64,000 nt of DNA, taken from NCBI GenBank assembly GCA_950097015.1, contig CATNEN010000034.1, positions 3,038,001 to 3,102,000 on the forward strand, read 5' to 3'. The notes beneath the pieces were generated by a model. It saw nothing but the letters and a program-made list of their open reading frames with translations. It had not been told where the DNA came from and ran no database searches. The position numbers and the translations under genes are program-made. Shown in pieces: positions 31,805 through 34,349 of the stretch; the stretch's first letter is position 1, and each line of letters starts with the position of its first letter. The stretch is from Macrostomum hystrix. Its lineage: Eukaryota; Animalia; Platyhelminthes.

Positions 31805-34237
31805 TCAGGGCACGTAGTTGGCAATGCATAGAGAAGCGTTCACACCGCCAAAGCCGAAACTGTTGCTAAGGGCAACCCGGCGACCAGCGGTATCGGCGGG
31901 CCACACAATCGGCGAGCCAGCCATTGAAAGGCGAGGCTTCGGCGAAATAGACGAATCATTGTGAAGCAGCTCGGGCAGATCGGGCTGGACCAGGTTGGCG
32001 GTGGGCGGCACCATGCCTTCGCGGCAGGAGAGCGCAGTCAGGGCGGCTTCAACAGCACCGGCTGCGCCAATCAGATGTCCGATGGCGCCTTTGCAGGATG
32101 TGACCAGACAGTCTGGCAAGAGGAAAGGAGGGCCGGACAGGGCCAGCGAGCAGATGGCCAACCATTCGGCGGCGTCGCCAATCGGTGTCGAGGTGGCGTG
32201 AGCGTTCACGTGACCGATTTGTAAGGCCGGCGAAGTCTGCTCCTGACTGTGTGCAGCTGAGGCGGCTGCGGGACATAATATGGTATATTTTGGAGCTATC
32301 AGGGAAACAGCCGAACTGGAAACAGCCAGCTAAAGTGAAAACGGCCGAACTGAAAACAGCCAGCCAAAGTGGAAACAGCCGAACTGAAAACAGCTAGCCA
32401 AATTGGAAACAGCCGAATGGGAAACAGCCGAACAGGAAACAGCCGAATGGGAAACAGCCGAAGAGGAAACAGCCGAAGAGGAAACAGCCGAAACCGCCAA
32501 AGTGGAAACAGCTAAAATTGGGGGCTGTTAAAACTTAAAGTTAAAACCGCTGAGGCGGAAACCGCTGAGGCGGAAACCTAGGATAAAACTAAACTACCCA
32601 CACACCAATTAGCAGAAGGAACCGCTCCCACCTGCGTCCTGCAGTGCAGCCAGCATGGATCTCTTGGCGCCGCTGTTGCAGCCGACCTGTATCGGCGCAG
32701 TTAAATGAAACGCGTCGCAGGCGGCGCCGTAGCCCAGCAGCTCGGCGATGGGCTCAGCGCCACGGGCCAGCGCCGACTCCAGCGGCTCCAGCACCAGCAT
32801 GCCGGCGCCTTCCGACATGACGAAGCCGCAGCGGCCGGAGTTGAACGGCTGGGAGGCGAGCTCTGGCGAATCGTTGAAGCGAGTGGCGAGTGCGCGGATT
32901 CGACTGAAGGCAGCGATCTGGAATTCATGCCAGTAGTTTTATTGGGACCCCCGCTGCACATTTGACATTCGACGAAAGACATCAGTTTATACAGACATGC
33001 AGGCAGCCAGGAAAGACAGACACACCCGGGATAGACAGACAGACAGACAACATGGACAGACAGATAGACCCTTAGGACATATCGAGAGACATAAAACAGA
33101 GGACAGACAGATACCAAGGACAGACAGAGAGCAAAAAAAGACACCAAGGACAGACGACGGGCAGACACCAAGGACAGAGAGACACCAAAGACAGACACCA
33201 AGGACAGAGAGACACCAAGGACAGACACCAAGGACAGAGAGACACCAAGGACAGAGAGACACCAAGGACAGAGAGACACCAAGGACAGACACCAAGGACA
33301 GAGAGACACCAAGGACAGAGAGACACCAAGGACAGACACCAAGGACAGAGAGACACCAAGGACAGAGAGACACCAAGGACAGACACCAAGGACAGAGAGA
33401 CACCAAGGACAGACACCAAGGACAGAGAGACACCAAGGACAGACACCAAAAACAGACACCAAGGACACAGGCAGGCAGGCAGGCAGGCAGGCAGGCAGGC
33501 AGGCAGGCAGGCAGGCAGGCAGGCAGGCAGGCAGGCAGGCAGGCAGGCAGGCAGGCAGGCAGGCAGGCAGGCAGGCAGGCATGCAGGCAGGCAGGCAGGC
33601 AGGCAGGTCTCACCGCCAGCGGTCCAACGCAAGCCTCGGTGCCGCCGCACAGAGCGACATCGGCGTAGCCGTCGCGCAGCAGTCTAAAAGCGGCGCCAAT
33701 GGCATCGGCGCCGCTGGCGCAGGCGCTGTTTGGCGCCAGGCAGGGCCCGCGAGCGCCGAACTCGATGGCCACTCGGCCGGCCGGCATGTTGTTTAACAGT
33801 TTGGTGAGGAAATGCGGCCCGACGTCGGCGTAGCCGCGGCCTCGCCGTAGTCCGACGCCGGTGTCAACGGCGGTCTCAAGGCCGTCCATACCGCAGCCGA
33901 CTGCGGCGACAATCAGGGCGTCCGGCGTGCGGCTTCGCAGCCCGGCCAGGTTGGCGCAGTCGGCGGCTTCGCGAGCGGCGGCCAGCGCCAGAGCGGAGGC
34001 GCGCGACATTGAGCCCAGCAGTCTGGGGTTCGATTCCCAGTGCGGCCAGGCTGCCAAATCAGAGTCGGAGATAAGACCGGCCACTCGGCAGGGCAGGCCG
34101 GCGTAGCCGTCCTCGGAGAGGCGCGAGAATCGCGGCCGGCCAGCCAGGACATTGTGCCAGACTGCTCGCCAGCCCAAACCGACGGGAGCAGCGAGGCCGA
34201 TGCCGGTAATCACTACTCGGCGCGGCGGACAGCGCAC
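31805..34237 (-). CDS. OXSM: 3-oxoacyl-ACP synthase, mitochondrial type (exons 34237-33614, 32917-32632, 32265-31805); no genomic ATG found
   Basis: [22 protein letters not shown] (catalytic Cys), [20 protein letters not shown] and [12 protein letters not shown] (two His), SNSFGFGG. Introns are GT-AG and phase-consistent. Confidence 0.93.
32300..32580. repeat. Degenerate GAAACAGCCGAA repeats in OXSM intron 2
   Basis: Direct inspection. Confidence 0.75.
33030..33607. repeat. GACA/GAGA-rich repeat plus (GCAG)n microsatellite in OXSM intron 1
   Basis: Direct inspection; source of the PACL and QAGR ORFs. Confidence 0.95.
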
Positions 34238-34349
34238 CTGCGGGTTTTGAGTTGGTCCAACCAGACCCTGCTTCTAAAGATGGCATTCGAATTTGTTATA
34301 TGCGACTTTGTCTATCAGATACTGGAAACGGCACTTACTCCTTCAGATT

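What the first reader, a model, noticed from the sequence alone, without database searches (positions are those of the whole stretch)
34200..34280. OXSM has no start codon and is in phase to use the spliced-leader AUG
Seen: the coding sequence begins directly after an acceptor (CCCGCAG| at 34238) with GTG CGC TGT CCG in phase 0. An in-frame TAG lies 39 nt upstream (34276-34274) with no ATG in between, and I found no convincing upstream ATG exon before RAD54B. Established: flatworm spliced leaders end in a conserved AUG that can act as initiator Met. Inference: SL trans-splicing supplies the start ([13 protein letters not shown]), making this conserved enzyme obligately SL-dependent, with an unusually short mitochondrial presequence.
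Basis: partly seen in the sequence, partly recalled or inferred. Interest (0 to 1): 0.7.

Follow-up and report, generated by a model that had tools for sequence, protein, structure and literature searches.

The report
OXSM start codon from spliced leader
In this Macrostomum flatworm the gene for the mitochondrial fatty-acid-synthesis enzyme OXSM has no start codon of its own and most likely borrows the AUG that ends the trans-spliced leader, a flatworm habit known since 2006; the RNA junction itself could not be seen here.

Summary
On the minus strand an intact, expressed, three-exon OXSM (mitochondrial beta-ketoacyl-ACP synthase) gene begins at an AG acceptor (CCCGCAG|, AG ends at 34238). An in-frame TAG lies 39 nt upstream with no ATG between. 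The first in-frame Met is about residue 78, inside the enzyme fold. All three M. lignano copies are built the same way: acceptor TTGCAG| in phase 0, three codons before RRVVITG, no ATG, and database models that start without Met. No upstream exon is conserved, and the six possible ATG...GT exons in the 1.7-kb spacer all have weak donors. Published Macrostomum spliced leaders end in ATG. So a spliced-leader AUG start is the best reading (about 0.75). It is not shown: RNA contigs from four runs stop at 34213, 24 nt short of the acceptor. The mechanism is already known (Cheng et al. 2006). This scan has noted many other start-less genes in this same genome, several reportedly RNA-confirmed; I did not check those. 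The one unusual point is that only 4-6 residues precede the fold, against 36-51 in other animal OXSMs. The first 35 fold residues are unusually basic and acid-free, which suggests a built-in uncleaved import signal; this is inferred only.

The parts
34238..34244 (-). Proposed spliced-leader (trans-splice) acceptor CCCGCAG|; the AG ends at 34238
   Evidence: Read directly. It lies three codons before the conserved Cys codon, the same position as the M. lignano acceptor GATTGCAG|. The identical heptamer CCCGCAG| is the cis acceptor inferred for exon 3 of this gene. It matches 4 of the 5 specified positions of the published M. lignano trans-splice motif YTNCAG (PMC8629364). No RNA reaches it.
33614..34237 (-). 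OXSM exon 1: 208 codons in phase 0, [12 protein letters not shown]..., includes the active-site Cys (NSACASG); donor GCG|GTGAGA
   Evidence: The exon 1-exon 2 splice at 33614 is shown by RNA contig overhangs in 4 runs from 2 studies. dN/dS against M. lignano is 0.22.
34274..34276 (-). In-frame TAG 39 nt upstream of the exon; also the AG of an alternative phase-0 acceptor (CATCTTTAG|)
   Evidence: and direct reading.
34268..34273 (-). Two more in-frame AGs (AAG|, CAG|) that could serve as alternative acceptors
   Evidence: Direct reading; their use is untested.
34284..34286 (-). Only nearby upstream ATG. It is out of frame and opens a 75-codon overlapping ORF that trans-splicing would remove
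32632..32917 (-). OXSM exon 2 ([14 protein letters not shown]...LQDA, ends in phase 1)
   Evidence: The start at 32917 is fixed by RNA overhangs that match it. The end is inferred from the donor GCAG|GTGGGA and homology to M. lignano P0002.
31805..32265 (-). OXSM exon 3 with both catalytic His motifs ([17 protein letters not shown]) and the stop codon
   Evidence: The boundary is inferred from the acceptor CCCGCAG| and the reading frame.
34305..34657 (.). 28-bp tandem repeat, 12.6 copies, directly upstream of the acceptor (in the outron or spacer)
35253..35767 (.). 33/67/100-bp tandem repeat in the spacer between the RAD54-like gene and OXSM
35952..36501 (-). Last coding exon and stop (TAG 35954-35952) of the upstream RAD54-like SNF2 helicase gene, on the same strand
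   Evidence: Read. It aligns by blastn to the M. lignano loci. The M. lignano neighbour carries the Pfam families SNF2-rel_dom, ResIII and Helicase_C.

Best explanation
The OXSM pre-mRNA is trans-spliced at the acceptor ending at 34238, or at one of three in-frame AGs 30-36 nt upstream. It is made either from its own promoter or as the downstream gene of a RAD54-like/OXSM polycistron. The Macrostomum spliced leader (SL) ends in AUG and lands in phase 0, so its last three bases become codon 1, giving [13 protein letters not shown].... Splicing also removes an out-of-frame upstream AUG and the in-frame TAG. The protein has no separate presequence. Import into mitochondria, if it happens, would rely on the first ~40 residues of the enzyme fold, which are strongly basic and acid-free. 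Shown here: gene anatomy, absence of any ATG, expression and cis-splicing, conservation of the architecture in M. lignano, and purifying selection. Taken from the literature: the SL ends in AUG and can initiate translation. Inferred: SL addition at this site, translation from the SL AUG, and mitochondrial import.
For: Gene and start region:
- The gene is intact. M. lignano P0002 residues 4-448 align across three exons without stops. The Cys-His-His motifs are present. dN/dS is 0.22.
- The gene is expressed and spliced. RNA contigs from 4 runs in 2 studies cover exon 1 and cross the exon 1-exon 2 junction.
- No in-frame ATG lies before residue ~78 of the fold, and a TAG lies 39 nt upstream.

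Comparison with M. lignano:
- All three genomic copies (L001-L003) have GATTGCAG|AGC GGC TGC CGT CGA, with the acceptor in phase 0 three codons before RRVV and no ATG. TTGCAG fits the published trans-splice motif YTNCAG exactly.
- The distance from acceptor to RRVV differs between the species by 6 nt, so the frame is kept.
- UniProt models start exactly at that acceptor without Met, and NCBI models are flagged 'partial'.
- Nucleotide and translated similarity between the species is confined to the RAD54-like last exon and to OXSM from 34222 onward. Nothing in the spacer is conserved.
- The six candidate ATG...GT exons are all weak.

Literature and context:
- The M. lignano SL is 35 nt and ends in ATG. 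About 30% of genes are trans-spliced, with enrichment in conserved genes (PMC8629364).
- The M. cliftonense and M. hystrix SLs are highly conserved and 'likely contain the final ATG' (PMC10468722).
- In S. mansoni the SL AUG is in frame in 28% of trans-spliced mRNAs, and more than 40 need it (Cheng 2006, as cited in PMC9851317).
- The repeat-adjusted distance to the same-strand upstream gene is about 850 nt, under the 1-kb operon threshold of PMC8629364.
Against: - No RNA contig reaches the acceptor. The furthest stops at 34213, and no leader overhang was seen.
- A search for N-terminal protein fragments from transcript assemblies found nothing.
- The SL gene of this genome was not examined here. 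No SL-like sequence lies in the window.
- The window's acceptor CCGCAG is an imperfect match to YTNCAG and has no pyrimidine tract.
- Three other in-frame AGs upstream leave the exact N-terminus open.
- A six-residue extension before the fold is very short for a matrix protein.
Confidence: 0.75

Rival explanations
1. A cis-spliced upstream exon, not recognised here, supplies the ATG and a conventional presequence. It would be fast-evolving and lie in the repeat-rich spacer or further upstream.
For: The 5' end of the mRNA was not seen. Presequences evolve fast, so lack of conservation is not proof. Other animal OXSMs have 36-51-residue extensions. One candidate at 35803-35705 (33 codons, donor AA|GTTAAT) is basic and acid-free.
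Against: The spacer holds only six phase-0 ATG...GT candidates, all with weak donors, and the best lies inside a tandem repeat. Two independent M. lignano annotations also found no upstream coding exon in any of three copies. The M. lignano spacer is microsatellite-like up to the acceptor.
Confidence: 0.12
2. Translation starts at a non-AUG codon, for example the GTG at 34237-34235, or at the internal Met near residue 78, on an mRNA that is not trans-spliced.
For: The first codon of the exon is GTG, a near-cognate start.
Against: M. lignano has AGC at that position, so a near-cognate start is not conserved. The context is poor (C at -3, C at +4). An unspliced leader would carry the out-of-frame ATG at 34286. 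Starting at Met ~78 would delete the first strand and helices of the ketoacyl-synthase fold, which align to human OXSM and FabF from residue 6.
Confidence: 0.04
3. The gene is trans-spliced but the protein is not imported. It would act outside mitochondria, or the locus is decaying.
For: There is almost no N-terminal extension. The Macrostomum branch in the OXSM tree is very long, 1.75 changes per site.
Against: Purifying selection acts on exon 1 (dN/dS 0.22). The catalytic motifs are intact. The protein sits inside the animal OXSM clade (98/91 and 100/99 support). The N-terminal 35 residues are acid-free with net charge +5, more than 4 SD above 103 homologs, as expected of an import signal.
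Confidence: 0.06

Closest known systems
[quoted passage not shown]
   Same: A flatworm spliced leader ending in AUG, an acceptor in frame with an ORF that has no start of its own, and a conserved housekeeping recipient gene.
   Different: In S. mansoni the junction and translation were shown experimentally. Here the junction is inferred. The organism is a free-living macrostomid, and the recipient is a matrix enzyme with almost no N-terminal extension.
Other start-less genes of this same genome noted by this scan (cardiolipin synthase, TOP3A, MRM2, DMAC2L, PRPP synthase, TFAM, D2HGDH)
   Same: Same genome and the same proposed mechanism. Several are mitochondrial proteins.
   Different: Those notes report RNA with the leader at the junction, which I did not check, and most encode a presequence-like extension of tens of residues. 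OXSM has only five codons before the fold and no junction evidence.
Echinococcus granulosus thioredoxin glutathione reductase: trans-spliced mRNAs encode mitochondrial and cytosolic variants (Agorio et al. 2003, listed in the references of PMC12582326)
   Same: Flatworm trans-splicing decides the N-terminus, and so the targeting, of an enzyme.
   Different: That case has two alternative isoforms. No evidence for two OXSM isoforms was found here.
Matrix proteins with non-cleavable N-terminal signals: 3-oxoacyl-CoA thiolase (Amaya et al. 1988), rhodanese, chaperonin 10 (as cited in PMC2031878); uncleaved signals built into conserved folds of mitoribosomal proteins (PMC8724765)
   Same: There is no removable presequence, and a basic N-terminus that is part of the mature fold could be the signal. 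The thiolase belongs to the same fold superfamily as ketoacyl synthases (my own knowledge).
   Different: Import and lack of cleavage are demonstrated for those proteins. For Macrostomum OXSM there is only a charge statistic.

Membership tests
Flatworm mRNAs initiated at the spliced-leader AUG | The organism's spliced leader ends in AUG | tested here: met
   Tested by literature only. The M. lignano SL, CGGTCTCTTACTGCGAAGACTCAATTTATTGCATG, ends in ATG (PMC8629364). The M. cliftonense and M. hystrix SLs are highly conserved and 'likely contain the final ATG', and all known flatworm SLs end in AUG (PMC10468722 and its supplement). The SL gene of this genome was not read here, and the window holds none.
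Flatworm mRNAs initiated at the spliced-leader AUG | RNA shows the leader joined to the acceptor at the start of the ORF | tested here: inconclusive
   contigs from 4 runs cover 33614-34213 only. None reaches 34237 and no leader overhang was seen; no N-terminal fragments were found in the protein collection.
Flatworm mRNAs initiated at the spliced-leader AUG | The acceptor is in phase with the ORF and no genomic in-frame AUG can open the conserved protein | tested here: met
   for the window. for three M. lignano copies.
Flatworm mRNAs initiated at the spliced-leader AUG | Translation actually starts at the leader's AUG | not testable with these tools
   This needs ribosome profiling, N-terminal proteomics or reporter assays.
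OXSM / mitochondrial KAS II (FabF-type ketoacyl-ACP synthase) | Ketoacyl-synthase N- and C-terminal domains with the Cys-His-His catalytic triad | tested here: met
   PF00109 matches with E 1e-31. The motifs [16 protein letters not shown] and GHLIGAAG are present. The M. lignano orthologue carries PF00109 and PF02801.
OXSM / mitochondrial KAS II (FabF-type ketoacyl-ACP synthase) | Descent from the animal OXSM lineage, not a bacterial FabF transfer | tested here: met
   In the tree of 47 rows the Macrostomum pair sits inside the eukaryotic clade (98/91 and 100/99 support), on a long stem. The gene has spliceosomal introns.
OXSM / mitochondrial KAS II (FabF-type ketoacyl-ACP synthase) | Cleavable N-terminal mitochondrial presequence and matrix location | tested here: not met
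   A presequence of the usual kind is absent: 3-5 genomic codons before RRVVITG against 36-51 residues in other animal OXSMs. Location itself cannot be tested here.
SL-resolved operon (downstream gene) | Same-strand upstream gene within 1 kb after subtracting repeats (criterion of PMC8629364) | tested here: met
   The spacer of 1714 nt minus 868 nt of tandem repeats leaves about 846 nt. The same gene order and strand occur in three M. lignano loci.
SL-resolved operon (downstream gene) | A polycistronic precursor RNA spans both genes | not tested

The most novel reading that the evidence does not exclude
Macrostomum OXSM has lost the ancestral cleavable presequence. It is imported through an uncleaved signal built into the first ~40 residues of the ketoacyl-synthase fold (net charge +4 to +5, no acidic residue), and its only methionine start comes from the spliced leader. 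A core mitochondrial enzyme would then depend on trans-splicing for translation and on its own fold for targeting.
Probability: 0.3. Interest if true: 0.45.

Novelty: new member of a known kind. Interest (0 to 1): 0.25.

Why it matters
The finding is useful for annotation. Start-less first exons like this one are flagged 'partial' or truncated in Macrostomum gene sets, as all the M. lignano OXSM models fetched here are, and adding the leader's AUG gives the true N-terminus. Biologically it is one more case of a mechanism known since 2006. The modest extra interest is a matrix enzyme with essentially no presequence, which would be a convenient natural test of fold-embedded import signals if localisation is confirmed.

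Tried and rejected
- Reads. Contigs from four runs were laid on 33608-34304 to catch a leader overhang. Coverage ends at 34213, so the junction is undecided. I kept the stretch narrow to avoid the flanking long tandem repeats, so the spacer was not examined.
- Protein-fragment search. The first 100 codons of exon 1 found no hits, so no transcript-derived N-termini were available.
- Leader-like sequence in the window. None was found, which excludes a local cis copy of the leader.
- Upstream exon hunt. Enumeration, blastn and tblastx against three M. lignano loci gave only repeat-versus-repeat matches.
- Supplements. I looked for the M. lignano gene id Mlig013427 and for trans-splice lists. Nothing is held.
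- Bacterial transfer of a FabF gene, which could have explained the missing presequence. Rejected by the tree and the introns.
- Start at the GTG codon. Rejected because M. lignano has AGC there.
- Joined spliced protein. I did not search it. Exons were used by reference, including the open read-through reference window:32990-34273:- scored on residues 13-220 only. The M. lignano database protein P0002 stood in for the full length.

Full report
**What is there**

The window comes from a Macrostomum flatworm that is not M. lignano. The best protein matches are M. lignano OXSM models at 79% identity, and the next best is 41%. Earlier scan notes name the species as M. hystrix; I did not verify that.

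On the minus strand lies a three-exon gene for mitochondrial beta-ketoacyl-ACP synthase (OXSM).
- Exon 1 runs 34237-33614 (208 codons, phase 0, donor GCG|GTGAGA).
- Exon 2 runs 32917-32632.
- Exon 3 runs 32265-31805.

Exon 1 matches Pfam ketoacyl-synt from its sixth residue (E 1e-31) and human OXSM structures best (E 1.5e-32). E. coli FabF aligns from its own residue 3 to residue 6 of the exon. The Cys-His-His motifs are intact. M. lignano P0002 aligns over residues 4-448 without a stop. dN/dS for exon 1 between the two species is 0.22. In a 47-row tree the Macrostomum pair sits inside the eukaryotic OXSM clade (98/91 and 100/99 support) on a very long stem. So this is a true, fast-evolving OXSM and not an acquired bacterial FabF.

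**Check of the observation**

The acceptor cccgcag| ends at 34238 and the exon opens GTG CGC TGT CCG CCG CGC CGA (VRCPPRR). The upstream frame reads *KQGLVGPTQNPQ, with TAG at 34276-34274 and no ATG. The only ATG within 460 nt upstream (34286) is out of frame. The first in-frame Met of the exon is about residue 78, inside the fold.

The 1714-nt spacer back to the stop of the same-strand RAD54-like gene (TAG 35954-35952) holds six ATG...|GT phase-0 candidates. All have poor donors, and the best lies inside a tandem repeat.

One thing was missed. The AGs at 34274 (the TAG itself, CATCTTTAG|), 34271 and 34268 are also in phase 0. Splicing there would add 10-12 residues and still use a leader AUG in frame.

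**RNA**

Public runs from two studies hold only about 40-47% of the sampled words of the gene stretch, roughly its exonic share. When these runs are laid on 33608-34304, their contigs match at 99% or more. They cross the exon 1-exon 2 junction: the overhang at 33614 is the start of exon 2. The gene is therefore expressed and spliced.

Coverage is thin and the furthest contig stops at 34213, 24 nt short of the acceptor. No contig lies upstream of 34237. The leader junction is neither shown nor refuted. A search for transcript-derived N-terminal protein fragments found nothing.

**Comparison with M. lignano**

Three genomic copies (L001-L003) keep the same neighbour (a RAD54-like SNF2 helicase), the same strand and a similar repeat-filled spacer. 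All three read GATTGCAG|AGC GGC TGC CGT CGA GTT GTG (SGCRRVV), with no ATG.
- The acceptor lies three codons before the conserved Cys codon, as in the window.
- TTGCAG fits the published trans-splice acceptor motif [T/C]TNCAG (PMC8629364).
- The distance from acceptor to RRVV is 9 nt in M. lignano and 15 nt here, so the frame is kept in both.
- UniProt models start at that acceptor without Met, and NCBI models are marked partial.
- Between the species, similarity is confined to the RAD54-like last exon and to OXSM from 34222 onward. Spacer hits are only repeat against repeat.

**Mechanism**

The M. lignano leader is 35 nt and ends in ATG. About 30% of genes receive it, with a bias to conserved genes (PMC8629364). 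The leaders of M. cliftonense and M. hystrix are highly conserved and are said to contain the final ATG. All known flatworm leaders end in AUG, which is sometimes the start codon (PMC10468722 and its supplement). In Schistosoma the leader AUG is in frame in 28% of trans-spliced mRNAs, and more than 40 need it (Cheng et al. 2006, as cited in PMC9851317; also PMC12582326).

The most likely reading (about 0.75) is that the leader is spliced to 34237 and its AUG becomes codon 1, giving [13 protein letters not shown].... This would also remove the out-of-frame AUG at 34286.

After subtracting 868 nt of tandem repeats, the spacer is about 846 nt. That is under the 1-kb operon criterion of PMC8629364. 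OXSM may therefore be the downstream gene of a two-gene operon that is conserved in M. lignano; this was not tested.

**The short N-terminus**

In 103 homologs, animal OXSMs carry 36-51 residues before RRVVITG and bacterial FabFs carry 2-12. Macrostomum has 3-5 genomic codons there.

The first 35 residues of the fold have net charge +5 here and +4 in M. lignano, with no acidic residue. The homologs average +0.86 (SD 1.0), and only 3 of 103 are acid-free.

This fits an uncleaved import signal built into the fold, as known for 3-oxoacyl-CoA thiolase, rhodanese and chaperonin 10 (cited in PMC2031878) and for some mitoribosomal proteins (PMC8724765). It is an inference from composition only. No targeting predictor or localisation data were available.

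**Rivals**

- An unseen, unconserved upstream cis exon (about 0.12).
- Non-AUG or internal initiation (about 0.04). M. lignano has AGC where the window has GTG, and Met ~78 would truncate the fold.
- A protein that is not imported, or a decaying locus (about 0.06). Purifying selection and the intact catalytic motifs argue against decay.

**Novelty**

The mechanism is known. This scan has already noted many start-less genes in this same genome, several reportedly with the leader seen in RNA; I did not check those. This is one more, less well-supported member. Its single unusual feature is the near-absence of a presequence on a matrix enzyme.

**Limits**

- The joined spliced protein was not searched. 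Exons were used by reference, and the M. lignano database protein served for the full length.
- The one reads call was kept to a repeat-free 697-nt stretch, so the spacer was not examined.

Noticed in passing
window 33034-33607, 34305-34657, 35253-35767, 36531-36995, 30857-31639: The OXSM intron 1, the spacer, the last RAD54-like intron and the region downstream of OXSM are packed with tandem repeats: (CAGG)35 and units of 17/30/47, 28, 33/100 and 21 bp. The M. lignano orthologous spacer is equally filled with tandem repeats, but of unrelated units (L001 2170-2915, 3500-3950). Repeat load is conserved while repeat sequence is not.
   Followed up: partly
window 35952-34238 and L001-L003: The gene order RAD54-like followed by OXSM, on the same strand, is conserved between this species and all three M. 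lignano copies. The repeat-adjusted spacers are under 1 kb, making this a candidate conserved two-gene operon.
   Followed up: partly
window 34286-34062 (minus strand): A 75-codon ORF starting at the out-of-frame ATG at 34286 overlaps the start of OXSM exon 1. It would be translated only from an untrans-spliced RNA.
   Followed up: no
protein P0124 (M. lignano, 757 aa): A database model that reads from OXSM on into about 300 residues of low-complexity sequence. It is probably a read-through or chimeric gene model.
   Followed up: no
protein P0035 (432 aa, Logan contig of 68.7 kb): An unnamed homolog that I placed among the eukaryote rows by judgement. It branches as sister to the other OXSM-clade rows. 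It starts MT-RVVVTG with no extension and has an acid-free, +4 N-terminal 35 residues. It is either another lineage with the same solution or a mis-called start.
   Followed up: no
window 34073: One RNA run (X2) reads G where the genome has A, within exon 1. It is a single contig at depth about 5, so it may be an allele or an error.
   Followed up: no
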